A DNA stretch of 58,426 nucleotides from Macrostomum lignano (lineage: Eukaryota), in the NCBI GenBank assembly GCA_002269645.1, contig NIVC01003035.1:1-58426 (forward strand), read 5' to 3'. The position numbers and the translations under genes were made by a program. The notes under the pieces were generated by a model. That model was given only the letters and a program-made list of their open reading frames with translations. It searched no databases and was not told the DNA's origin. This document shows positions 18,501-52,400 of the stretch, in pieces (position 1 is the first letter of the stretch; every line of letters starts with the position of its first letter).

Positions 18501-18687
18501 ATTTTTTAGAGAAACCCAGTTTCCCGTACCTATTCTACTTATAAGTAGTCACTGATGCTTACTCTTTAAATTCGTGGCTTCATATTTGAAAAAATGTTAA
18601 AAATATAAGTGACATTAGTGATAAGGAAAATTTTCAGTTGATTAAAAGCTTTAAAATGTCGGTAAAACCTATTCAAATTTAGTAAAA

Positions 18688-20164
18688 GGGGATGTCAACT
18701 TAAGCACCAGAATGGAGCCCGAAGTTCAGCTCCGGACCAAACCGACTGCAATCGATAACTTGTCGGCCCAGACGACTAGAATCGCCGAGACATCCCATCC
18801 GGCTCCCTTCCTTGGGGTCCCAGGGATAAAGGGGATAAAATGGGGATCTCATGTCAACTTAAGGCCCTGGAATGGAGCCCGAAGTTCAGCTCCGGACCAA
18901 ACCGACTGCAATCGATAACTTGTCGGCCCAGACGACTAGAATCGCCGAGACATCCCATCCGGCTCCCTTCCTTGGGGTCCCAGGGGATAAAGGGGATAAA
19001 ATGGGGATCTCATGTCAACTTAAGGCCCTGGAATGGAGCCCGAAGTTCAGCTCCGGACCAAACCGACTGCAATCGATAACTTGTCGGCCCAGACGACTAG
19101 AATCGCCGAGACATCCCATCCGGCTCCCTTCCTTGGGGTCCCAGGGGATAAAGGGGATAAAATGGGGATCTCATGTCAACTTAAGGCCCTGGAATGGAGC
19201 CCGAAGTTCAGCTCCGGACCAAACCGACTGCAATCGATAACTTGTCGGCCCAGACGACTAGAATCGCCGAGACATCCCATCCGGCTCCCTTCCTTGGGGT
19301 CCCAGGGGATAAAGGGGATAAAATGGGGATCTCATGTCAACTTAAGCACCAGAATGGAGCCCGAAGTTCAGCTCCGGACCAAACCGACTGCAATCGATAA
19401 CTTGTCGGCCCAGACGACTAGAATCGCCGAGACATCCCATCCGGCTCCCTTCCTTGGGGTCCCAGGGGATAAAGGGGATAAAATGGGGATCTCATGTCAA
19501 CTTAAGGCCCTGGAATGGAGCCCGAAGTTCAGCTCCGGACCAAACCGACTGCAATCGATAACTTGTCGGCCCAGACGACTAGAATCGCCGAGACATCCCA
19601 TCCGGCTCCCTTCCTTGGGGTCCCAGGGGATAAAGGGGATAAAATGGGGATCTCATGTCAACTTAAGCACCAGAATGGAGCCCGAAGTTCAGCTCCGGAC
19701 CAAACCGACTGCAATCGATAACTTGTCGGCCCAGACGACTAGAATCGCCGAGACATCCCATCCGACTCCCTTCCTTGGGGTCCCAGGGGATAAAGGGGAT
19801 AAAATGGGGATCTCATGTCAACTTAAGGCTCTGGAATGGAGCCCGAAGTTCAGCTCCGGACCAAACCGACTGCAATCGATAACTTGTCGGCCCAGACGAC
19901 TAGAATCGCCGAGACATCCCATCCGGCTCCCTTCCTTGGGTCCCAGGGGATAAAGGGGATAAAATGGGGATCTCATGTCAACTTAAGGCCCTGGAATGGA
20001 GCCCGAAGTTCAGCTCCGGACCAAACCGACTGCAATCGATAACTTGTCGGCCCAGACGACTAGAATCGCCGAGACATCCCATCCGGTTTCAAGTGACGAA
20101 GCTCTATTCTATTCGAATATCGCATTAGCGGGTGTATTTTATTTTAGCTATTATATATTGTTTG
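18688..20164 (+). repeat. Left TIR: ~9 tandem copies of a 160-161-bp unit (18688-20086) plus ~78 bp unique inner TIR
   Basis: ATGGAGCCCGAAG recurs at 18712, 18872, 19033, 19194, 19354, 19515, 19675, 19836, 19996. Inner segment tttcaagtgacgaagctc...ctattatatattg starts at 20087. Confidence 0.95.
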
Positions 20165-20400
20165 CATTGTAATATTTCCGTCGTTTAATTTTTCCGGATT
20201 TTTGAGAATGTTTTCGCGGTTTTGATTTGACCACTTTAGGCGAGAGATTTTTGATACTGTGCGTCAAGTATTTGTAGCATTAGTTTAAGTGATATATTTT
20301 AAGTGATATATTAATGAAGTTAAGGTTTTGGTCAGTTTTTCTTACTTAGTTTTATGACAGGTGCAGATTTGTTGCAGATTGCGTTTTATACTTGCTAGTA

Positions 20401-23337
20401 ATGTCCGATGTTACTTGCTCTCAATGTGGTCATCAATTCAGCAAAGCAGCCAATTTGAACCGACATCTCGAAACGACTAGATGTGGTCGCTGCTCATCTG
20501 AATCGTCTGGAGCCTTCGCGCCTCCGAGAAACGCACGAGAGGCGCTTCAGTTTCTTGCGGTCGGTGGTAAGTATGTGAAAGTTTTTTTGAACCCAAACCT
20601 TTTTCCACGAACCGCAAATGAGAAGGAGTTCAAACGTATTTGCGGTCTTAGCTATAGTGATTTCGATAGCTTCTCAGAAATGTTACCAGAAGTATCTCGC
20701 CTTCGTATTTTGACAAAGCCATCTCGAATATTTTTGTACCTGAAGAAGCTTCGCCAAGGTTGCAGCTTTCAATCATTAGCTTTCGATTTCAACATTTCTG
20801 CCCAAAGAGCATGCAACATTTTTTGGGAGATTGCCAAGGAGCAGTACCTACGGGATCCATATCAACCGAGGTCGATAGCGTCGACTCCGATTCAGACTCT
20901 GCTTGAGGAAAATGTAGTACGCGATCAATTTATTCTCGGTGTATTTCACACACTACTCAAAGGCAAGAAGCTTGTTCTTCTAGTGGGTGATCATACTTAC
21001 TTTTATCTCCCTAAGAGCAGCTCACACCACACGCAAATTCGAACTTACTTTTCCGGCAAGAAAATGAATGTGAACAAAAAAATGGCGGTTGTCAACAGTA
21101 GAGGAAAAATTATCTACACCGCTCCCCTTACCGCCGCTATCTCGCCAACAATGGGCGATGGGAATTTGACTGCAATGCAAGTTGACATGGAGGCTGAAGG
21201 ACTAATAGAGCCCATTTTGTTGCGCATTCTGTGCTCTGTACAGAAAGATTATCACGTTATTGGCATTTTCGACAAAGGTTACAGCCACCAACTTTGTTCA
21301 CCAACTTCGGTTAACTTCCGCGACTTTATAGAGACTAATAGTAAAGGCTGCACGACGCTTCTATTTCCGACCAGTCCAGGTGACCGAGTTCTAAACGAGC
21401 AGTTTGAATTTGTAAATAATGAGGCTCCTGTTGGTGACCGATCAATACCAGGAAAGCTTACATCAATCGAAGCAAATACAAGTCGCTGCGCTACGCTTTT
21501 CCGTTATCTCGTAGAATGTAGCTTTGCTGCAATCAAGCAGGACAAATGCATAAATGAGCGACAGGAGCCGTACCAATGGCTACATGCCCCAGAGTTTACC
21601 GAACGCAGCCGGCTCGATGTTGTTATTGAAAACTCCATGGCAAAATTCAACCGTTCGCATCCAGGATTTCAAGCTACAAGGAGTCTGCCGCCGTCATGGT
21701 CAGATTGCTCCATGTTCGAATACGGACGGAACTTTGCTAAACGTCTTTTCATTGCGAATGAGCTAGACGAAATTGAGCAACTTGAGTACAATTGCGATTT
21801 GACTCGAATACCAACGAGTTCTACCCGAAAATGGACAGCAGTGGATCCCCTGGACCCTGAAAGTTCAGGGTTCCCCAGCGTTGACGAAAGAAATCTGGAA
21901 GAGCTTAGCATCGGCCCATACCACGTTCTTCAGTCAAAACGCTACATCGAAAACGTCAGAGTTCATGAGGTGCTCAGTAGCTACGCTGGAGACTCGTGGC
22001 GCGATTTCGAATTGTTGATTTCTGAACTGCCAAGCCATTTAAAATGCTGGAAGTTTCATCAGCGAGCGCCACCAAAGGGGTGGAGCAGTAAGTTTGGAGA
22101 ATGGAGGCCATCTTGGATATATTTAGCCGTTCTTCATTCCCGTCATCGGTCAAAAACTTACCGAGTTGTCCTTCGTATTTGCGAAACTGCAAGTGGTAAC
22201 CGATTCGGATTTCGTGACTCGGGGCTGCTGCGTCTGCATGGCTACTTTTCATCCTCAAAGGCCGGAAGCAGGACAGCAGGGTGTGACAGTCATGTTATGG
22301 CTGTGGTTAGAATGCTAGGCTGTTATGCATATCACCCCGAAAGCTACAACATGTGCGGCAGCAGCTTCCGATTTATTGACAGTGCTTTGCCAAAAGCACT
22401 GATTGCCAATCTTTACAATGATCAATCTGGTGGTCATCCAGCTCCAAATGCACCTCGCAGAGACAGTGCTGAATCGCAGCAAGATGAACAGAGGCACAGT
22501 TCAAATGCTACTGGTTCATTGAATTCGCCGAAGAAGTTATTTGGGTTGCCAAATAATGGCCTGCAGTGCTACGCAAATGCAGCAGTGCAATTGTTTCTCT
22601 GCCTGCATTCTAATGGATGCATTTTAAAAGAGACTAGCAACGACCAAGTCCATCGAGAGCTGCTTCGTCTTCTGACGGAGATGCAACAGCGGTCTGCAAC
22701 AGTCACTCCACTGTTAACGGCAGTTCAGTTGCAACATCCAGATTCATTTCAAACAAATCAGCACCATTGCGTCAACGAATTTGTTCAAACGCTTCTAATA
22801 CATCTGGAATTTCTGTCATCAGATGCTTTCACAGAATTTTCACTCATTCAAACTTGTCGGGATTGCCAGCGCACAAGTGCTGAAGTTCCTGTTGGCACAA
22901 TCGATAACAGAGTGATTTGCATTCCTCTCTGTCAATTTGAGCGCTCAATTGTCAGTTTAGACAAAATCTTCTGCGCTTTTGTCGCTCCTCAGGTAGTGAA
23001 ATGTTCGGACGCCAATTGCCTGGGCGATTGTAATCAAGAGATCGTAGTAACACCTGGAAAGTTTACCCTGATATATCTTGATCGTGCTAGTATGGATGGC
23101 CACCTTAAGCTTCAAACTCCTGTAAGCTTTTCTTCAAGGTCAGGGGGTGTTTCTACACTTGGTAAGCCAGTGGCCACAATATCACACCATGGAAACCGAC
23201 TGAAATCGGGACATTTCACAGCAAGCGTACTGAGCTGTGTGTGGACGAGAATTGACGACATGAAAGTTACGTCAGACTATAACCCGTTCGTACGTGAGCC
23301 TGAGTGCATCGTGCTCGTTGCACTTTTAAACTCGTAA
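20401..23337 (+). CDS. Transposase-deubiquitinase fusion (978 aa): C2HC zinc finger, HTH_Tnp_4, DDE_Tnp_4, degenerate SWIM, USP/peptidase C19-like domain
   Basis: Cx2Cx12Hx5C at the N-terminus. IFLYLKKLRQG.SFQSLAFDFNIS HTH. D(20989, VGDHT), D(21271, FDKGY), E(21514, LVECSF). USP Cys box GLPNNGLQCYAN (C at 22567), His box HHG...SGHFTA (H at 23212), WTRIDD (23254). No stop or shift. Confidence 0.88.
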   Translation: MSDVTCSQCGHQFSKAANLNRHLETTRCGRCSSESSGAFAPPRNAREALQFLAVGGKYVKVFLNPNLFPRTANEKEFKRICGLSYSDFDSFSEMLPEVSRLRILTKPSRIFLYLKKLRQGCSFQSLAFDFNISAQRACNIFWEIAKEQYLRDPYQPRSIASTPIQTLLEENVVRDQFILGVFHTLLKGKKLVLLVGDHTYFYLPKSSSHHTQIRTYFSGKKMNVNKKMAVVNSRGKIIYTAPLTAAISPTMGDGNLTAMQVDMEAEGLIEPILLRILCSVQKDYHVIGIFDKGYSHQLCSPTSVNFRDFIETNSKGCTTLLFPTSPGDRVLNEQFEFVNNEAPVGDRSIPGKLTSIEANTSRCATLFRYLVECSFAAIKQDKCINERQEPYQWLHAPEFTERSRLDVVIENSMAKFNRSHPGFQATRSLPPSWSDCSMFEYGRNFAKRLFIANELDEIEQLEYNCDLTRIPTSSTRKWTAVDPLDPESSGFPSVDERNLEELSIGPYHVLQSKRYIENVRVHEVLSSYAGDSWRDFELLISELPSHLKCWKFHQRAPPKGWSSKFGEWRPSWIYLAVLHSRHRSKTYRVVLRICETASGNRFGFRDSGLLRLHGYFSSSKAGSRTAGCDSHVMAVVRMLGCYAYHPESYNMCGSSFRFIDSALPKALIANLYNDQSGGHPAPNAPRRDSAESQQDEQRHSSNATGSLNSPKKLFGLPNNGLQCYANAAVQLFLCLHSNGCILKETSNDQVHRELLRLLTEMQQRSATVTPLLTAVQLQHPDSFQTNQHHCVNEFVQTLLIHLEFLSSDAFTEFSLIQTCRDCQRTSAEVPVGTIDNRVICIPLCQFERSIVSLDKIFCAFVAPQVVKCSDANCLGDCNQEIVVTPGKFTLIYLDRASMDGHLKLQTPVSFSSRSGGVSTLGKPVATISHHGNRLKSGHFTASVLSCVWTRIDDMKVTSDYNPFVREPECIVLVALLNS

Positions 23338-23943
23338 AAGCATTTTTAGCGAAAATACAATTGTTTTAAGCGAGTGTACTGTACGTTTTGTATTGCAGAT
23401 TTTAAAGGACATGCAGATTAAGAAACAATGTCATCTCACGCATTCTTTACGTACCATAGGTTACATGTGAAGATAATTCAGACTGACATCAAATAACAAA
23501 AGCTTTGAATTAGTTGTTTCAATTTCTTTTAGACTCACAATTAACTAAAAATTGGAAGTATTTTTTACTGAAGCAAAGAACTTAAACCCAAAAACCTTTT
23601 CTTAGGACTGAGAAACTTTTGCAATTATGATTTTACTAAGCTTTGCGTGAGAGGCGTTACTTTATTTGCTTAAAAACGTGTGCTGCTTTGCATGACATGC
23701 TTTGTTTTTATTACTTTGATAACTTGTACAGCTTTGCATGATATGCTTTGTATCCATTACGTCATAACTTGTACAGCCTTGCGTGATATTCTTTATTTTA
23801 CCAATATACATGGTTTCGGTTTATCGTCAAAAGTTCTGCTTACTAATAACCAAACGAATTTACAAGTTAATTTTTTCAAACTGAGTTTCCAGATCAGCAT
23901 TTTTAACAGGTTTCGATACGAGCAAATCATTTTTATTACTTAA

Positions 23944-26389
23944 CAATCAATGTATAATAGCTGAAATAAAATACACCCGCTAATGCGATATTCGAATTGA
24001 ATAGAGCTTCGTCACTTGAAACCGGATGGGATGTCTCGGCGATTCTAGTCGTCTGGGCCGACAAGTTATCGATTGCAGTCGGTTTGGTCCGGAGCTGAAC
24101 TTCGGGCTCCATTCCAGAGCCTTAAGTTGACACGAGATCCCCATTTTATCCCCTTTATCCCCTGGGACCCCAAGGAAGGGAGCCGGATGGGATGTCTCGG
24201 CGATTCTAGTCGTCTGGGCCGACAACTTATCGATTGCAGTCGGTTTGGTCCGGAGCTGAACTTCGGGCTCCATTCCAGAGCCTTAAGTTGACATGAGATC
24301 CCCATTTTATCCCCTTTATCCCCTGGGACCCCAAGGAAGGGAGTCGGATGGGATGTCTCGGCGATTCTAGTCGTCTGGGCCGACAAGTTATCGATTGCAG
24401 TCGGTTTGGTCCGGAGCTGAACTTCGGGCTCCATTCCAGAGCCTTAAGTTGACATGAGATCCCCATTTTATCCCCTTTATCCCCTGGGACCCCAAGGAAG
24501 GGAGCCGGATGGGATGTCTCGGCGATTCTAGTCGTCTGGGCCGACAAGTTATCGATTGCAGTCGGTTTGGTCCGGAGCTGAACTTCGGGCTCCATTCCAG
24601 AGCCTTAAGTTGACACGAGATCCCCATTTTATCCCCTTTATCCCCTGGGACCCCCAGGAAGGGAGCCGGATGGGATGTCTCGGCGATTCTAGTCGTCTGG
24701 GCCGACAAGTTATCGATTGCAGTCGGTTTGGTCCGGAGCTGAACTTCGGGCTCCATTCCAGAGCCTTAAGTTGACATGAGATCCCCATTTTATCCCCTTT
24801 ATCCCCTGGGACCCCAAGGAAGGGAGCCGGATGGGATGTCTCGGCGATTCTAGTCGTCTGGGCCGACAAGTTATCGATTGCAGTCGGTTTGGTCCGGAGC
24901 TGAACTTCGGGCTCCATTCCAGAGCCTTAAGTTGACACGAGATCCCCATTTTATCCCCTTTATCCCCTGGGACCCCCAGGAAGGGAGCCGGATGGGATGT
25001 CTCGGCGATTCTAGTCGTCTGGGCCGACAAGTTATCGATTGCAGTCGGTTTGGTCCGGAGCTGAACTTCGGGCTCCATTCCAGAGCCTTAAGTTGACATG
25101 AGATCCCCATTTTATCCCCTTTATCCCCTGGGACCCCAAGGAAGGGAGCCGGATGGGATGTCTCGGCGATTCTAGTCGTCTGGGCCGACAAGTTATCGAT
25201 TGCAGTCGGTTTGGTCCGGAGCTGAACTTCGGGCTCCATTCCAGAGCCTTAAGTTGACACGAGATCCCCATTTTATCCCCTTTATCCCCTGGGACCCCCA
25301 GGAAGGGAGCCGGATGGGATGTCTCGGCGATTCTAGTCGTCTGGGCCGACAAGTTATCGATTGCAGTCGGTTTGGTCCGGAGCTGAACTTCGGGCTCCAT
25401 TCCAGAGCCTTAAGTTGACATGAGATCCCCATTTTATCCCCTTTATCCCCTGGGACCCCAAGGAAGGGAGCCGGATGGGATGTCTCGGCGATTCTAGTCG
25501 TCTGGGCCGACAAGTTATCGATTGCAGTCGGTTTGGTCCGGAGCTGAACTTCGGGCTCCATTCCAGAGCCTTAAGTTGACACGAGATCCCCATTTTATCC
25601 CCTTTATCCCCTGGGACCCCAAGGAAGGGAGCCGGATGGGATGTCTCGGCGATTCTAGTCGTCTGGGCCGACAAGTTATCGATTGCAGTCGGTTTGGTCC
25701 GGAGCTGAACTTCGGGCTCCATTCCAGAGCCTTAAGTTGACATGAGATCCCCATTTTATCCCCTTTATCCCCTGGGACCCCAAGGAAGGGAGCCGGATGG
25801 GATGTCTCGGCGATTCTAGTCGTCTGGGCCGACAAGTTATCGATTGCAGTCGGTTTGGTCCGGAGCTGAACTTCGGGCTCCATTCCAGAGCCTTAAGTTG
25901 ACACGAGATCCCCATTTTATCCCCTTTATCCCCTGGGACCCCAAGGAAGGGAGCCGGATGGGATGTCTCGGCGATTCTAGTCGTCTGGGCCGACAAGTTA
26001 TCGATTGCAGTCGGTTTGGTCCGGAGCTGAACTTCGGGCTCCATTCTGGTGCTTAAGTTGACATGAGATCCCCATTTTATCCCCTTTATCCCCTGGGACC
26101 CCAAGGAAGGGAGCCGGATGGGATGTCTCGGCGATTCTAGTCGTCTGGGCCGACAAGTTATCGATTGCAGTCGGTTTGGTCCGGAGCTGAACTTCGGGCT
26201 CCATTCCAGAGCCTTAAGTTGACACGAGATCCCCATTTTATCCCCTTTATCCCCTGGGACCCCAAGGAAGGGAGCCGGATGGGATGTCTCGGCGATTCTA
26301 GTCGTCTGGGCCGACAAGTTATCGATTGCAGTCGGTTTGGTCCGGAGCTGAACTTCGGGCTCCATTCTGGTTCTTAAGTTGACATCCCC
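23944..26389 (-). repeat. Right TIR: ~78 bp unique inner TIR plus ~15 inverted copies of the 161-bp unit (24022-26389)
   Basis: Reverse complement of the left TIR. Repeat-derived ORFs recur every 161 nt from 24273 to 26365. Inner segment matches the left one with about 4 mismatches. Confidence 0.95.
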
Positions 26390-26977
26390 TTTCTAGGGGA
26401 TTCGTTAATAACAATTTTTTAACAAATACCACACGTTCAAATCAAAACATGTGGGTAATTTCTTGTAATAGTAAACAAAGTATTTGAATAAAATAAAAAA
26501 CTGTGATTCAAAAACAGAATATGATCATTCATCACAAGGCCGGAAAATCTCTTTATCAGTTAGACAGTGTAGAGATCAAACGATAAGTTATTTACATGCA
26601 TACTAGAAATAATGTATACAAATACTTAGATTTACATACAAGTACATGCGATTTCAAAAATAGCTCGTAGTTCAGTTTAGGGCTCCAGAATAAAATAACC
26701 AAAGAATAACAAAAACCTACAGCTAACATTTTTGAAATGATTAACTTGAATTTATATGATAGCATCTATCGATAAGGCTGACTTACAGAACGAACAGCCA
26801 GACAATAACTTTTCAGACATGAATGCTACGAAGAGGACCGAAACAATAGCAACTGTTCATAATTGAACAGGAGATTCAAAACTAGACAAAAAGTCGCATA
26901 GTCATCCTTTTTGTTGTAGTATCTTGTCGGCTTTATTTGCAAATCGTTCTCGAACTAATTGTGCTCAGTGGCGAATT

Positions 26978-46582: not shown

Positions 46583-48066
46583 ATGCAAGTCGCCAGTAAA
46601 GAGGCCGCTGTGAGATGCGCCGAAGAGCTGCTCATGTCGCTGCACAATCCGTCAACGAGGGACTCGGCTCTGGCTGAGCTGAGCAAGCATCGCGACGCCA
46701 TACCGGAATTGGCTTGTCTGATCTGGCAGTCCTTTGGCTGCGTTGCCATTCTGTTAGAAGAGATCGTGTCCGCGTATCAGCATCTCAGCACTGGGGCATT
46801 GTCGGTAAGTTTGTGTTGCCTTGATTCTTGATCTACCGATATGCATCGAAAACTTGTCGGTCAGTGTGTGTTTTTATGTTGCTTTGGTTCATGATCTACC
46901 GATATGTATCGAAAAAAAATTGGTGAGTGTGTGTTCTTGTGTTGCTTTGGTTTATGATCTACCGATATGTATCGAAAACTTGTCGGTGAGTGTGTGTTTT
47001 TATGTTGCTTTGGTTCATGATCTACCGATATGTATCGAAAACTTGTCGGGGAGTGTGTTTTTCTGTTGCTTTGGTTCGTGAATTACCGATATGTATCGAA
47101 AAATTGTCGATGAGTGTGTTTTTGTGTTGCTTTGGTTCATGATCTACCGATATGTATCGAAAAAATTGTCGGTGAGTGTGTGTTTTTTGTGTTGCTTTAT
47201 TTCTTGATATACCGATATGTATCGAAAAAACGTAATTAATTTAACAATTTGGTAAATTTGTACTAATGTAGTAGATGCATTTACAGTGTTTGAAACTAGT
47301 TTTATTGATACACTCACTTAGATTAGGTTAGTTTAGTTAAAGTTCGCGAAGAGCAATTAGTCTGCTGCACTCTTGTTTTATAGAAGCAACGCTGCTTAAC
47401 CGTCTCAAAGCATTTAGTTTGATGAAGCGTCTTTGCGCCTGTCACTCGATCACCGATAAAAGTGCATTCACAGCTGTGTCTCTTTAACCCCCTCCCTCCC
47501 GCATGCCTGAGCGGCCTCCTTGCCTATGGAGCCGACTAGCGGAGCAGTGAGGCCTTCTCTAATTAAAGCTAAGGGTTTGCTGTTTGGGTTGTGATGCACA
47601 AATCCTGCCCAGTTGGAGATTGTGCCGGCGTGTGGATATGACTGGTTATTGGGGACTGAGCTGCTCCACTGCGTCTCATTTCTTCTTGATTAACGCTTGT
47701 GTCAGTCCGGCATCTGTGTGCCTGCTTCTCTGCCTGTCTGTCTGCCTGTCTGTCTGTCTGTCTGTCTGTGTGCCTGCTTCTCTGCCTGTCTGTCTGCCTG
47801 TCTGTCTGTCTGTCTGTCTGTGTGCCTGCTTCTCTGCCTGTCTGTCTGCCTGTCTGTCTGTCTGTCTGTCTGTGTGCCTGCTTCTCTGCCTGTCTGTCTG
47901 CCTGTCTGTCTGTCTGTCTGTCTGTGTGCCTGCTTCTCTGCCTGTCTGTCTGCCTGTCTGTCTGTCTGTCTGTCTGTGTGCCTGCTTCTCTGCCTGTCTG
48001 TCTGCCTGTCTGTCTGTCTGTCTGTCTGTGTGCCTGCTTCTCTGCCTGTCTGCGTCTGTCTGTTCA

Positions 48067-48103
<37 letters not shown>

Positions 48104-48140
48104 GTGCCTGCTTCTCTGCCTGTCTGCGTCTGTCTGTTCA

Positions 48141-48203
<63 letters not shown>

Positions 48204-48314
48204 GTCTGTCTGTCTGTCTATCTGTCTGTTCATCTGTCTGTCTGTCTGTCTGCCTGTCTGTCTGTCTGTCTGTCTGTGTGCCTGCTTCTCTGCCTGTCTG
48301 CGTCTGTCTGTTCA

Positions 48315-48371
<57 letters not shown>

Positions 48372-48374
48372 TCA

Positions 48375-48423
<49 letters not shown>

Positions 48424-48460
48424 GTCTATCTGTCTGTCTGTCTGTCTATCTGTCTGTTCA

Positions 48461-48521
<61 letters not shown>

Positions 48522-48566
48522 GTCTATCTGTCTGTCTGTCTGTCTATCTGTCTATCTGTCTGTTCA

Positions 48567-48635
<69 letters not shown>

Positions 48636-48672
48636 GTCTATCTGTCTGTCTGTCTGTCTATCTGTCTGTTCA

Positions 48673-48741
<69 letters not shown>

Positions 48742-48778
48742 GTCTATCTGTCTGTCTGTCTGTCTATCTGTCTGTTCA

Positions 48779-48843
<65 letters not shown>

Positions 48844-48880
48844 GTCTATCTGTCTGTCTGTCTGTCTATCTGTCTGTTCA

Positions 48881-48945
<65 letters not shown>

Positions 48946-48982
48946 GTCTATCTGTCTGTCTGTCTGTCTATCTGTCTGTTCA

Positions 48983-49059
<77 letters not shown>

Positions 49060-49114
49060 ATATCTATCTATCTGTCTATCTCTATCTATCTATCTATCTA
49101 TCTATCTGTCTATC

Positions 49115-49161
<47 letters not shown>

Positions 49162-49328
49162 GTCTATCTCTATCTATCTATCTGTCTATCTGTCTATCTA
49201 TCTATCTGTCTATCTCTATCTATCTATCTGTCTATCTATCTATCTGTCTATCTTTATCTATCTATCTGTCTATCTATCTATCTATCTATCTGTCTATCTA
49301 TCTATATATCTATCTGTCTATCTATCTG

Positions 49329-49367
<39 letters not shown>

Positions 49368-49416
49368 GTCTATCTATCTATATATCTATCTGTCTATCTA
49401 TCTGTCTATCTATCTG

Positions 49417-49455
<39 letters not shown>

Positions 49456-52400
49456 GTCTATCTATCTATATATCTATCTGTCTATCTATCTGTCTATCTA
49501 TCTATTTCCCTAATCTAAGTTGTTGTATTTTAGCACACCAAAGTGCTTTAAGTACTTCTATAGTTCGTATGGGCCATCTCTAATTGCCCATGCACTTTAA
49601 GCACTCTTTTCACCTCTTTTTGATCGCTTCTTTGTTAAGTTCGTTTTAGATGTATTAATAAAGGTAACTTCGCTCAGTTAATTGCTTTCCCTGCTCAGTC
49701 CAGGGGCCGAAATTTTTTAGCACGAAATTGCGTTACCGTCATGACCCTGGTCATCTGGTTCAGAGCTTCAAAGGTCTTCGTTTTCCTTGACTATCCTCAT
49801 GCACAGTCATTTTCCTTTGTGAGACTCGTTTTTATCGTCCTTGAGTATCTAAATTTTTTGGATAGTTTCCCAATCATCAGTGTTTTATTATCCTCGAGTT
49901 CTCCCAGTAATGAATTATCACTAGTTATGAATTGAATTATGCCTAGTCATGAATTATCCCTACTTATGAATTATCCCTAGTCATGAATTATCCCTACTTA
50001 TGAATTATCCCTACTTATGAATTATCCCTACTTATGAATTATCCCTACTTATGAATTATCCCTACTTATGAATCATCCCTAGTCATGAATTATCCCTACT
50101 TGTGAATTATCCCTACTTATAAATTATCCCTACTTATGAATTATCCCTACTTATGAATTATCCCTACTTATGAATTATCCCTACTATGAATTATCCCTAA
50201 TATGAATTATCCCACTTATGAATTATCCCTACTATGAATTATCCCACTTATGAATTATCCCTACTTATGAATTATCCCTACTCATGAATTATCCCTACTA
50301 TGAATTATCCCACTTATGAATTATCCCTACCTATGAATTATCCCTACTTATGAATTATCCCTACTTATGAATTATCCCTACTTATGAATTATCCCTAACA
50401 TAAATTATCCCACTTATGAATTATCCCACTTATGAATTATCCCACTTATGAATTATCCCTACTTATGAATTATCCCTACTATGAATTATCCCTACTTATG
50501 AATTATCCCTACTATGAATTTTCCCTAACATGAATTATCCCTACCTATGAATTATCCCTACTTATGAATTATCCCTACTTATGAATTATCCCTACTATGA
50601 ATTATCCCTAACATGAATTATCCCACTTATGAATTATCCCTACTTATGAATTATCCCTACTATGAATTATCCCTACTATGAATTATCCCTACCTATGAAT
50701 TATCCCTCACTTATGAATTATCCCTACTTATGAATTATCCCTACTATGAATTATCCCTAATATGAATTATCCCACTTATGAATTATCCCTACTATGAATT
50801 ATCCCACTTATGAATTATCCCTACTTATGAATTATCCCACTTATGAATTATCCCACTTATGAATTATCCCACTTATGAATTATCCCTACTTATGAATTAT
50901 CCCTACTTATGAATTATCCCTACTATGAATTATCTACACTTCTGAACTACCCCATATTTCTTACTGCTTATATTATTCTAATTTTTCCAACACACATGGC
51001 AGTGTTGTCTTTAATTTATTTTCCCAATCCTGATTCCCGCTCCCCTTCCCACCTGTGACAGGTGCAGCTATCAAATCGGGTATGCAACGCCATGGCCCTG
51101 CTGCAGTGTCTGGCTGCACACCCAGCCACTAGGCGGGCTGTGTTGGACCTGCAGCTGGTGCACTACCTGTTCCCGTTCCTAAGCAACCATCCTCAGCATC
51201 AGCCGGCAGATCCTCGCCCAGCTGAGTTCCTTCGCCTCACAGCTTTGGGTGTTATTGGCGCTTTGGCGAAGTCCGAAGATCCTCAGGCTGTTGAATGCCT
51301 TCTACGAACCGAACAGCTGGTGCCGCTGTGCCTTCGCGTGATGGACTTTGGCAGCGAGCTGAGCCGCACTGTGGCCACCTTTGTGGTGCAGAAGGTGCTG
51401 CAGGATCCCGCTGGGCTGGCCTACGTGTGCAACACCTATCAAAGGTTTGAGCAGGTGGCCGCAGGTCTGGCTGGCGTTCTGGTGTACTTGCGAGTGAACC
51501 CGAGCGCCCGACTATTGAAGCACGTTGTTCGATGCTATGTGCTGCTGACTGATAACTTCAGGTAGGGGTTCACTCGTTTTTATTAGTCGCTTGTATTACT
51601 CAGTTAAACCATTGGCTTTTAAATCCATGGGACTTAAAATGTATGTGAAAATTGGCCTTCAAATTCTTAGGGAAAATCGGCATTTCAGTTCTTAGGGATA
51701 ATCGGCCTTCAAATGCTTAACGAAACATCGGCATTCGAATTCTTAAGGAAAATCGGCCTTCAAGTTCTTAAAGAAAATCGGCCTTCAAATTCTTAAGGAA
51801 AATCGGCCTTCAAATTCCTAAGGAAAATCGGCCTTTAAATTCCTAAGGAAAATCGGCCTTCAAATTCCTAAGGAAAATCGGCCTTCAAATTTTTAAGGAA
51901 AATCGGCCTTCAAATTCCTAGGGAAAATCGGACTTCAAATTCTTAGGGAAAATCGGACTTCAAATTCTTAAGGAAAATCGGCCTTCAAATTGTTGGGGAA
52001 ATCGGCCTTCAAATTGTTGAGAAAATAGGCCTTCAAATTGTTAGGGAAAATCGGCCTTCAAATTGTTGGGAAATCGGCCTTCGAATTGTTGAGAAAATAG
52101 GCCTTCAAATTCTTAAGGAAAATCGGCCTTCAAATTCTTATGGAAAATCGGCCTTCAAATTCTTAGGAAAATCGGCCTTCAAATTCTTAAGGAAAATCGG
52201 CCTTCAAATTGTTGGGAAGATTGGCCTTCAAATTGTTGGGAAAATCGGCCTTCGAATTGTTGGGAAAATCGGCCTTCAAATTGTTGGGAAAATCGGCCTT
52301 CAAATTGTTAAGAAAATCGGCCTTCAAATTCTTAAGGAAAATCGGCCTTCAAATTCTTAAGGAAAATCGGCCTTCAAATTCTTAAGGAAAATCGGCCTTC

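What the first reader, a model, noticed from the sequence alone, without database searches (positions are those of the whole stretch)
18688..26389. TIRs built from asymmetric tandem arrays of a 161-bp unit that reiterates the transposon end
Seen: ~9 copies left and ~15 right in inverted orientation, in identical phase at both outer and inner borders, plus ~78 bp of unique inner TIR. Each unit contains GGGGATctcATGTCAACTTAAG, a variant of the terminus GGGGATGTCAACTTAAG, preceded by two more GGGGATAAA motifs. About half the element is TIR. Known: foldback-type elements have repeat-rich TIRs, whereas PHIS elements usually have short ones. Inference: multimerised transposase-binding or decoy sites. 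The 161-bp period is close to a short nucleosome repeat length, and read-through transcription would form a >1.4-kb hairpin that could feed siRNA/piRNA pathways.
Basis: partly seen in the sequence, partly recalled or inferred. Interest (0 to 1): 0.8.

Follow-up and report, generated by a model that had tools for sequence, protein, structure and literature searches.

The report
Spy transposon with tandem-array inverted ends
This is a complete, recently mobile "Spy"-type cut-and-paste transposon whose two inverted ends are variable-length tandem arrays of a 161-bp unit repeating the end sequence, a design also found in diverged sister families in this genome and not reported before for this transposon group.

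Summary
Window 18688-26389 is a 7,702-bp element with 8.7 (left) and 14.6 (right) inverted copies of a 161-bp unit. The arrays are in the same phase at all four borders, and 78 bp of unique inner inverted repeat follows each.

It is an autonomous Spy-group (PHIS) DNA transposon. All 11 copies examined sit exactly between AAA and TTT with no target-site duplication. Each has an uninterrupted empty site elsewhere in the assembly at 90-100% identity. Twelve copies keep an intact 995-codon open frame (978 aa from the first ATG), with zinc finger, HTH, DDE and a C-terminal UCH/USP domain.

Array length varies from 1 to about 46 units per arm, with no left/right bias. Unit-variant patterns show local duplication plus inheritance through transposition. 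Only the outermost junction (GGGGAT|GTCAAC) is ever an end. The internal junction carries a 5-bp insert and is never seen as a terminus (0 hits genome-wide).

Sister families (transposases 44-58% identical) have the same architecture. A roughly 52-bp junction block recurs every 159-161 bp, while the unit middles are unalignable.

Best reading: the internal blocks are uncleaved inner transposase-binding sites, like IR/DR sites or the Galileo and Tetris repeats, multiplied by unequal recombination. Binding itself is inferred, not shown. The nucleosome and small-RNA ideas are untested. I rate it a new variant of a known kind.

The parts
18685..18687 (.). Host AAA half of the AAA|TTT target site (not part of the element)
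   Evidence: All 22 arms examined are preceded by AAA. Joined flanks match uninterrupted empty sites elsewhere in the genome.
18688..18704 (+). Left terminus GGGGATGTCAACTTAAG (cleaved end)
   Evidence: The 32-nt terminus pattern occurs 84 times forward and 95 times reverse in the genome, with 0 in the control.
18688..20086 (+). Left TIR array: 9 landmarks (8 units of 160-161 bp plus a 110-nt partial unit)
   Evidence: variant string PBBBCBbQc.
20087..20164 (+). Left inner unique TIR segment (78 bp)
   Evidence: bases 1-78 of the query match 23944-24021 on the minus strand at 95%.
20165..20400 (+). 5' untranslated region between the TIR and the ATG
   Evidence: Bases 20087-20400 are 100% identical in at least 10 other copies.
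20401..23337 (+). Single intron-less transposase ORF (978 aa plus stop): C2H2 zinc finger (aa 5-25), HTH_Tnp_4 (aa 104-142), DDE (D197, D291, E372), UCH/USP domain (aa 715-958)
   Evidence: Twelve genomic copies are 98-100% identical with no stop codon.
23338..23943 (+). 3' untranslated region
   Evidence: Bases 23500-24021 are 100% identical in at least 11 other copies.
23944..24021 (-). Right inner unique TIR segment (78 bp)
24022..26389 (-). Right TIR array: 15 landmarks (14 units plus a 110-nt partial unit). Alternating CTCAT/CTCGT units give a 322-bp higher-order period.
   Evidence: variant string dAeAHALALALAfMJ.
26373..26389 (-). Right terminus GGGGATGTCAACTTAAG (reverse strand)
26390..26392 (.). 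Host TTT half of the target site

Best explanation
The feature is one copy of a young, autonomous Spy-group (PHIS superfamily) cut-and-paste DNA transposon.

Shown:
- It inserts seamlessly between AAA and TTT.
- It is cut only at the outermost GGGGAT|GTCAAC junction.
- It carries its whole arrays along when it moves.

Each TIR has three layers. The first is the true terminus. The second is a variable number of 161-bp units, each re-creating the terminal ~110 bp behind a ~50-bp GGGGAT-rich linker. The third is a 78-bp unique inner segment.

Inferred: the ~52-bp block across each unit boundary is an inner, uncleaved binding site for the transposase's N-terminal zinc-finger/HTH region. In family A the block reads AAAGGGGATAAAATGGGGATCTCAT|GTCAACTTAAGGCTCTGGAATGGAGCC. 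It would work like the inner DR of IR/DR elements or the secondary THAP sites in Galileo's TIR repeats, helping recruitment and paired-end assembly. The 5-bp insert and the missing AAA flank would keep it from being cleaved.

Shown as a pattern, with the mechanism inferred: the number of units changes quickly in place, by unequal recombination or replication slippage between units. Copy number itself seems weakly constrained, since intact copies have from 2 to 42 units per arm. Whether extra units raise or damp activity is unknown.
For: Identity and mobility:
- 22 of 22 arms end at AAA|GGGGATGTCAACTTAAG.
- There is no duplication beyond AAA/TTT.
- The joined flanks of all 11 copies hit contiguous empty sites, several at 240/240 nt and 100% identity.
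- Twelve copies have intact frames at 98-100% identity.
- The internal 314-bp and 522-bp segments are 100% identical in at least 10 copies.
- The transposase has HTH_Tnp_4 and UCH domains and conserved D197/D291/E372.

Arrays are part of the element and hypervariable:
- Arms have 2-42 units in 11 full copies. Older copies (92-96% identical) have 1-4.
- Genome-wide there are 1,120 internal junctions against 179 termini.
- Variant strings show local runs and higher-order repeats. They also show motifs shared between the same-side arms of different copies, and left and right arms have different innermost unit types.
- One locus present on two contigs has 2 versus 4 units.

The internal junction is never an end: AAA|GGGGATYTCRTGTSAACTTAAG has 0 hits in 764 Mb.

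Conservation:
- The sister family at C3075 (56% aa identity) has 161-bp arrays in both TIRs.
- A 49%-identity family has blocks at +159 and +160 bp with dissimilar middles.
- The block TGGGGATTTCATGTGAACTTAAGGCTCT occurs 355 times at 159-161-bp spacing, in inverted arms around transposase relics of 44-58% identity.
- Between families the unit ends are 19-24/26 identical. For the A-B comparison the middle ~109 nt are at shuffled level.

Literature analogues:
- Sleeping Beauty inner DRs are bound but not cleaved (PMC7827188).
- The Galileo THAP domain binds sites within the TIR tandem repeats (PMC3688188).
- Shortening the 467-bp cgSpy TIRs lowers activity to 42-60% (PMC11304231).
Against: - No binding or transposition data exist for this element, so the binding-site role rests on conservation and analogy.
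- TIR arrays can move between families. Short elements carry family-A arrays around a core from a family only 36-43% identical in protein. So some cross-family similarity could reflect exchange rather than long purifying selection.
- Within family A, the blocks are only slightly and not significantly less variable than the middles.
- A 51%-identity homologue from a metagenome has the same terminus type but no clear array.
- A 494-bp derivative with about half a unit per arm exists and is flanked by AAA/TTT. Arrays are therefore not strictly required for insertion.
- Exact unit counts depend on assembly quality, which I could not check against reads.
Confidence: 0.6

Rival explanations
1. Neutral satellite-like by-product. 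Only the terminus, and perhaps one inner site, matters. The extra units are selectively neutral duplications that any >100-bp direct repeat tends to accumulate, and they have no role in transposition.
For: - Copy number ranges from 1 to more than 40 per arm with no left/right pattern. Intact copies span that whole range.
- Some related elements have a single internal block per arm (C221, C197, C471, C513).
- A 494-bp derivative lacks full units.
- Within-family variability does not clearly spare the block.
Against: - At least three diverged families show multi-unit arrays with the same 159-161-bp period despite unalignable middles.
- In the 49% family, blocks are conserved while the intervening sequence differs between units of one arm. 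That is not what recent neutral duplication gives.
Confidence: 0.22
2. Self-regulation or host-silencing trigger. The arrays titrate transposase (decoy sites), or read-through transcripts fold into kilobase hairpins that feed small-RNA silencing, so long arrays limit activity.
For: - The arms are 97-99% complementary over more than 1.4 kb.
- There are many potential binding sites per element.
- Published speculation holds that long Spy TIRs affect overproduction inhibition (PMC11304231).
Against: - There are no expression or small-RNA data.
- The copies with the longest arrays (25/42 units at C1502, 31/4 at C1388) are 99-100% identical to the others, have intact ORFs and are polymorphic insertions. 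Long arrays therefore have not prevented recent movement.
Confidence: 0.1
3. Chromatin-phasing element. The ~160-bp period positions one nucleosome per unit, and the conserved spacing reflects nucleosome-scale organisation of the ends, possibly linked to the transposase's deubiquitinase-type domain.
For: - The period is conserved at 158-161 bp across families with unrelated unit middles.
- A UCH/USP domain with an intact Cys box and His box is fused to the transposase. It is retained in the 56% sister family.
Against: - The evidence is purely correlative, with only a few families.
- A protein-architecture constraint (looping between bound sites) or shared ancestry of units explains the period equally well.
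- No chromatin data exist.
Confidence: 0.06
4. Assembly artefact. The arrays are over-expanded or mis-joined by the assembler.
For: - Units are 97-99% identical and arrays reach 6.7 kb.
- The assembly contains duplicated haplotype contigs.
- One locus differs in unit number between two contigs.
Against: - At least 24 independently assembled arms have the same phase at both borders.
- Each has its own aperiodic pattern of unit variants.
- Arrays occur in 3 or more families.
- Older, diverged copies also contain units.
Confidence: 0.02

Closest known systems
Spy transposons (PHIS superfamily; Han et al. 2014, PMC4122938; cgSpy/cvSpy, PMC11304231)
   Same: - Precise insertion between AAA and TTT without target-site duplication, proven here with empty sites.
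- A single ORF with an N-terminal HTH and a DDE domain.
- TIR length is highly variable between published families (9-1,474 bp).
- Long TIRs contribute to activity in cgSpy.
   Different: [quoted passage not shown] Here the TIRs are tandem arrays of up to ~46 units and 7 kb.
- The DDE spacing is D(93)D(80)E, against the published D(79-80)D(44-62)E.
- The terminus GGGGATGTCAAC fits the GGANNNNG consensus only loosely.
- The transposase has an added C2H2 finger and a C-terminal UCH/USP domain.
Galileo (P superfamily, Drosophila; PMC3573991, PMC3688188)
   Same: - Foldback-like long TIRs containing direct tandem repeats.
- Copy number differs between copies and between the two arms.
- The repeats hold secondary transposase (THAP) binding sites.
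- Chimeric copies occur.
   Different: - A different superfamily, with a 7-bp TSD.
- The repeats (~210 bp, 0-3 copies) lie 264-467 bp inside the end and do not reiterate the terminus.
- No intact Galileo transposase is known, whereas here there are 12 intact copies.
Tetris and Foldback (FB) elements (PMC4079207)
   Same: - TIR made of a terminal domain, a variable array of ~220-bp repeats and an inner domain.
- The repeats share a 37-bp stretch with the terminal domain.
- Allelic 3-versus-4 repeat variation is attributed to unequal crossover.
   Different: - Tetris is non-autonomous and of unknown transposase.
- Its repeats have seeded kilobase satellite arrays outside elements. No such free arrays were seen in the places listed here.
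- Here the unit reiterates ~110 bp of the end, starting 6 bp from the terminus.
IR/DR ends of Sleeping Beauty and related Tc1 elements (PMC7827188, PMC5224488)
   Same: - Each end has an outer cleaved site and an inner similar-but-distinct site that is bound but not cut.
- The small length difference between outer and inner sites (2 bp in SB, 5 bp here) goes with cleavage only at the outer site.
   Different: - A different superfamily, with a TA TSD.
- There is exactly one inner DR per end, not a variable array.
- Binding has been shown biochemically for SB and is only inferred here.

Membership tests
Spy group of PHIS | [quoted passage not shown] | tested here: met
   22/22 arms are flanked by AAA and 11/11 copies by AAA...TTT with no further repeat. 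Empty sites were found for all 11, several at 240/240 nt and 100% identity.
Spy group of PHIS | Single long ORF encoding a DDE transposase (no second Myb-like ORF) | tested here: met
   One 995-codon open frame fills the 3.9-kb core. D197 and D291 are at least 90% conserved and E372 is invariant among 14 homologues.
Spy group of PHIS | DDE spacing D(79-80)D(44-62)E as described in 2014 | tested here: not met
   The spacing is D(93)D(80)E. The residues are assigned by motif and alignment, not by structure. The published range came from a small 2014 sample.
Spy group of PHIS | N-terminal helix-turn-helix | tested here: met
   Pfam HTH_Tnp_4 at aa 104-142, E = 3.7e-5 and 23.7 bits. This is just under the curated cut-off of 27.
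Spy group of PHIS | Terminal consensus 5'-GGANNNNG-3' | tested here: inconclusive
   The terminus is GGGGATGTCAAC. GGA is present at positions 3-5, but the eighth base of that window is A, not G. The published consensus is only 'relatively well conserved'.
Spy group of PHIS | Transposase falls inside the Spy clade in a phylogeny with PIF/Harbinger and ISL2EU references | not tested
   No named reference transposases were available in the tools. The homologues found are unnamed metagenomic proteins.
Foldback-like elements (structural class) | Long TIRs built of internal tandem repeats, making up a large share of the element, with repeat number variable among copies and arms | tested here: met
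   51% of this copy is TIR. Arms have 1 to ~46 units.
Foldback-like elements (structural class) | Repeats carry secondary transposase-binding sites | not testable with these tools
   Only sequence conservation of the junction block is available.
Foldback / P superfamilies (phylogenetic sense) | MULE/FB-type or P/THAP-type transposase and their TSDs | tested here: not met
   The transposase has an HTH_Tnp_4 domain and PIF-like DDE motifs, and there is no TSD.
IR/DR-type ends | Outer cleaved site plus inner related site that is never cleaved | tested here: met
   This holds at sequence level only. The internal junction equals the terminus plus 5 bp, and 0 genomic termini are of the internal type against 179 canonical ones.
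Satellite DNA | Long arrays existing independently of a mobile element | tested here: not met
   In the arrays where both ends were examined, units sit between a canonical terminus and an element core (22 arms; listed places). The total is ~1,120 units, about 180 kb. The listings are capped at 100 places, so this test is incomplete.

The most novel reading that the evidence does not exclude
A whole clade of Spy transposons may use a fixed ~160-bp lattice of inner binding blocks to build a nucleosome-scale, multi-subunit end complex. The transposase-fused UCH/USP deubiquitinase domain might act on chromatin or ubiquitinated factors positioned on that lattice. Array length would then tune activity and be a fast-evolving, heritable rate control for the element.
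Probability: 0.1. Interest if true: 0.85.

Novelty: new variant of a known kind. Interest (0 to 1): 0.6.

Why it matters
- Spy transposons are being developed as seamless gene-transfer vectors, because they leave no duplication on insertion. How their long TIRs work is acknowledged as unclear.
- This family has at least 12 intact, near-identical, polymorphic copies and a natural series of 1 to more than 40 end-repeats per arm. It is a ready-made system to test whether reiterated inner sites enhance, damp or merely accompany transposition.
- It extends foldback-like TIR arrays, known from P and Foldback-type elements, to the PHIS superfamily. This strengthens the case that multiplied inner binding sites are a convergent solution.
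- The conserved 159-161-bp spacing across families, and an inner site better conserved than the true end, are concrete and testable clues to transpososome architecture.

Tried and rejected
- The word-indexed protein search found no homologue. The full HMMER scan found 133, all unnamed, so the host organism could not be named. No reference phylogeny could be built.
- Pfam gave no DDE_Tnp_4 hit. The DDE residues had to be assigned from an alignment.
Most non-autonomous copies, the C907 cluster, the right arm of the 49% family and further families were seen only as coordinates.
- A test for lower within-family variability in the junction block was uninformative because there are too few variable sites.
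- The flanks of a 25%-identity homologue showed no similar ends (L065).
- An 8-bp inverted copy of the terminus inside each A unit (GACATCCC) is absent from the family-B unit sequence (by eye), so I dropped it as a candidate site.
- I considered AAA being part of the TIR. The internal AAAGGGGAT motif makes this tempting, but the empty sites rule it out.
- I considered a systematic left/right asymmetry. The 11-copy comparison rules it out.
Full report
**1. Observation**

Tandem Repeats Finder reports two arrays of period 161. One is at 18692-20086 (8.7 copies, 97% matches) and one at 24022-26367 (14.6 copies, 98%). They are inverted relative to each other, with arms up to 637 nt at 99% complementarity in many registers.

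Reading both ends outside-in shows the same layout on each side:
- The host bases AAA.
- The terminus GGGGATGTCAACTTAAG.
- Units of 160-161 bp.
- A final 110-nt partial unit ending ...CATCCCATCCGG.
- A 78-bp unique inverted segment (20087-20164 and 23944-24021, 95% identical).

The internal unit boundary reads ...CCCAGGGGATAAAGGGGATAAAATGGGGATCTCAT|GTCAACTTAAGG.... This is the terminus with a 5-bp insert (CTCAT, or CTCGT in alternate right-arm units), preceded by two more GGGGATAAA motifs.

The element spans 18688-26389 (7,702 bp), of which about 51% is TIR.

**2. What the element is**

The core holds one intron-less open frame, 20401-23337, of 978 aa. Pfam finds:
- A weak C2H2 finger (aa 5-25).
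- HTH_Tnp_4 (aa 104-142, E = 3.7e-5).
- A UCH/USP ubiquitin-hydrolase domain above its curated cut-off (aa 715-958, E = 3e-9).

An alignment with 13 remote homologues shows D197 and D291 at least 90% conserved and E372 invariant, in PIF-like motifs (GDHTY, FDKGY, VECSF).

The window belongs to a 764-Mb, 5,269-contig eukaryotic assembly.

I fetched both arms of 10 other full-length copies. All 22 arms, including the window's, begin AAA|GGGGATGTCAACTTAAG(C/A)ACCAG. All 11 copies are flanked by AAA...TTT with no further direct repeat.

A query made of the 11 joined flanks (120 + 120 nt each) found a contiguous match for every copy elsewhere in the assembly. Identities run from 90% (a repeat family) to 100%. 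Several matches are exactly 240/240 nt at 100%, for example C1789 and C51 for the C1938 copy, C1175 for C1388 and C1502:12973 for C1502. C487 (for C1347) and C2578 (for C2965) also match at 100% and run one to three bases past the 240-nt segment. The window's own flanks match C2236 at 98%.

So AAA and TTT are host bases. Insertion is seamless, and filled and empty alleles coexist. This is the signature of Spy transposons, defined by Han et al. 2014 as inserting between AAA and TTT without duplication, with one DDE ORF and an N-terminal HTH (PMC4122938).

Two descriptive features from that paper are not met literally. The DDE spacing is D(93)D(80)E against D(79-80)D(44-62)E. The GGANNNNG terminal consensus fits only loosely. 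I could not place the protein in a reference phylogeny.

**3. The family is young and active-looking**

Twelve copies have an intact 995-codon frame at 98-100% amino-acid identity. The 314-bp 5' and 522-bp 3' non-coding segments are 100% identical in at least 10 copies.

The 32-nt terminus occurs 84 times forward and 95 times reverse (control 0), which is roughly 90 elements in an assembly that contains duplicate haplotype contigs. Paired termini give element sizes from 494 bp to 14.6 kb. The 494-bp element (C997) is an internal-deletion derivative, itself flanked by AAA/TTT. The 14.6-kb element is at C1502.

**4. Behaviour of the arrays**

Units per arm, given as left/right and oriented by the transposase:

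| Copy | Left | Right |
|---|---|---|
| Window (C3035) | 9 | 15 |
| C2965 | 15 | 18 |
| C2727 | 11 | 7 |
| C2437 | 7 | 13 |
| C1938 | 2 | 8 |
| C1484 | 11 | 12 |
| C1388 | 31 | 4 |
| C1347 | ~23 | 13 |
| C749 | 7 | 13 |
| C172 | 7 | 8 |
| C1502 | 25 | 42 |

The median is about 11.5 and there is no left/right bias. A non-autonomous copy at C199 has about 46 units in one arm.

Older copies (92-96% identical) have 1-4 units. The left arm of C1546 is just the 115-bp terminal module joined to the inner segment.

Genome-wide there are 1,120 internal junctions for 179 termini, about 6.3 per arm and about 180 kb in all. In the places listed, arrays lie between a canonical terminus and an element core. 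I saw no free satellite, though the listings are capped at 100 places.

I coded each unit by its exact sequence. This gave four results:
- Every arm is unique.
- Arms contain local runs and higher-order repeats, such as ALALALA in the window's right arm, BBB in its left arm and thirteen A units in C1388.
- Same-side arms of different copies share sub-patterns, such as AABEBB and STA.
- Left and right arms keep different innermost unit types (mostly J versus I).

This pattern fits arrays that are inherited through transposition and remodelled in place by unequal exchange or slippage. That remodelling happens much faster than base substitution.

One insertion is present on two contigs (C2444 and C240, with identical flanks). 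It has 2 units on one contig and 4 on the other. Tetris shows the same kind of allelic variation, 3 versus 4 repeats (PMC4079207).

**5. Only the outermost junction is an end**

The pattern AAA|GGGGATYTCRTGTSAACTTAAG is what an element cut at the last GGGGAT of an internal junction and re-inserted would show. It has 0 hits in the genome. Cuts at the two upstream GGGGAT motifs could not be distinguished by a short pattern.

**6. Conservation in sister families, the main new result**

A transposase 56% identical to the window's lies at C3075. It aligns over aa 1-976, so it includes the UCH region, and has a 1,022-codon frame with no stop. It is flanked by TIRs with about 5 and about 8 units, of exactly 161-bp period in the left arm.
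- Its terminus is AAA|GGGGATGTGAACTTAAGAGTCAAAATGGAGCC.
- Its internal junction is AAAGGGGATAAATGGGGATTTCAT|GTGAACTTAAGGCTCTAGAATGGAGCC.

A 49%-identity relic at C422 has the terminus AAA|GAGGATGTAAACTTAA. Blocks follow at +159 and +160 bp, and the sequences between them are not similar to each other. Self-BLAST recovers only the 42-bp block.

The 28-mer TGGGGATTTCATGTGAACTTAAGGCTCT (up to 1 mismatch) occurs 355 times (control 0). It typically lies at 159-161-bp spacing in inverted arms around transposase relics 44-58% identical to the window's. Examples are C212 with 8/9 blocks, C422:170709 with 3/7, C364 with 3/7 and C717. Some elements have a single block per arm (C221, C197, and the ~190-bp C471 and C513).

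Pairwise comparison of units from the three families shows:
- The first 26 nt are 22-24/26 identical.
- The last 26 nt are 19-22/26 identical.
- The middle ~109 nt are at the level of shuffled controls for A versus B (0.50 against 0.47 +/- 0.02). They are slightly above for A versus the second C422 unit (0.52) and for B versus that unit (0.59 against 0.49 +/- 0.03).
- Unit lengths are 161, 161, 160 and 158.

The bases after CTTAAG are conserved at internal junctions (GGCTCTRRAATGGA) but differ at the true termini (CACCAG, AGTCAA, ACGCGA). So a ~52-bp block and its spacing are kept, while the rest of the unit is free to change.

One caveat applies. TIRs can be exchanged between families. Three short elements carry family-A arrays around cores that encode relics only 36-43% identical to the window's transposase, and the arrays break inside units. 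Such exchange cannot explain the A-versus-B comparison, because it would also carry the middles.

A 51%-identity metagenomic homologue has the terminus AAA|GAGGATGTCAACTTAGG but no clear array.

**7. Mechanism**

Shown:
- Seamless AAA|TTT insertion.
- Use of the outermost junction only.
- Transmission of arrays with the element.
- Rapid change in unit number.
- Conservation of the block and the period across families.

Inferred:
- The junction block is an inner, uncleaved transposase-binding site.
- The 5-bp insert and the missing AAA context prevent cleavage there.
- Multiple sites aid or modulate paired-end complex assembly.

Three analogues support the inference:
- Sleeping Beauty's IR/DR ends have inner DRs that differ from the outer ones by 2 bp, are bound more tightly and are never cut (PMC7827188).
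- Galileo's THAP domain binds sites inside its TIR tandem repeats (PMC3688188).
- Trimming cgSpy's 467-bp TIRs to 320 or 191 bp lowers activity to 42-60% (PMC11304231).

Whether many units help, hinder or are neutral is open. The wide range of copy number among intact polymorphic copies argues against strong selection on the number itself.

The nucleosome-period and hairpin/small-RNA ideas remain untested hypotheses. The conserved period is compatible with a chromatin explanation but does not demonstrate one.

**8. Novelty**

Tandem repeats inside long TIRs, partly derived from the terminal domain and variable between copies and arms, are known from Foldback, Galileo and Tetris.

For Spy and PHIS, the founding paper states that long TIRs show no apparent subrepeat structure. 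The 2015 PHIS survey does not mention tandem repeats or subrepeats, and the cgSpy paper has no occurrence of 'tandem' or 'subterminal'. Literature searches found no PHIS transposase fused to a UCH domain.

I therefore rate this a new variant of a known kind. It has an unusually clean natural series of array lengths and a cross-family conservation signal that makes the function testable.

Noticed in passing
window 22543-23274 (aa 715-958 of the transposase): A UCH/USP-type ubiquitin hydrolase domain is fused to the C-terminus of the transposase (Pfam PF00443, E = 3e-9, above the curated cut-off; Cys box GLPNNGLQCYANA, His box SGHFTA). The region is retained in the 56%-identity sister family (alignment runs to aa 976). 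A 25%-identity, 955-aa metagenomic homologue also shows it (P0021, weak UCH). Literature searches found no report of such a fusion in PHIS elements.
   Followed up: partly
L056 (C232:162700-165160), L057 (C1515), L058 (C254): Non-autonomous elements of 1.9-2.4 kb have family-A 161-bp arrays at both ends. Their ~1-kb cores encode relics of a transposase only 36-43% identical to the window's, with no nucleotide similarity. The arrays break inside units. These look like chimeras made by TIR capture or template switching between Spy families.
   Followed up: partly
L059 (C2444:26600-27500) versus L060 (C240:248700-249850): The same insertion, with identical flanks, appears on two contigs and has 2 versus 4 units in the same arm. 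One linker is also diverged. This is either allelic array-length change or an assembly difference.
   Followed up: partly
window 19330-19350 and 19651-19671; C1502 right arm (L050): The unit variant typical of the terminus (CTTAAGCACCAG, 160 bp) also occurs inside arrays, behind an internal-type junction. In C1502 it heads repeated sub-blocks (CA|CAEBAEGGAA|CAEGGAA). Simple unequal crossover does not explain how a terminal-type unit gets inside.
   Followed up: no
G000 C907:44539-51842 and 73329-80049: Termini occur in the order +,+,- twice, 28.8 kb apart. This could be a nested or solo-arm arrangement inside a duplicated segment. It was seen only as coordinates.
   Followed up: no
window 6093-8983 (minus strand): There are two long open frames. 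One matches organellar/viral type-B DNA polymerase (PF03175, E = 4e-13). The other has a weak endonuclease VII hit. This may be a fragment of a self-synthesising element or of viral origin. I observed it only.
   Followed up: no
window 36189-58426: These 22 kb are packed with more than 15 different minisatellites (units of 17-84 bp, arrays of 0.3-1.2 kb) and a 1.8-kb (TCTG)n tract at 47729-49503. That tract explains the extreme AT and GC skews there.
   Followed up: no
L064 (JGI metagenome contig Ga0450804_2229600, 1-900): A 51%-identity homologue from an unrelated sample has the end AAA|GAGGATGTCAACTTAGG. The GRGGATGTNAACTTA terminus and the AAA flank therefore extend beyond this genome. No 160-bp array is evident there.
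   Followed up: partly
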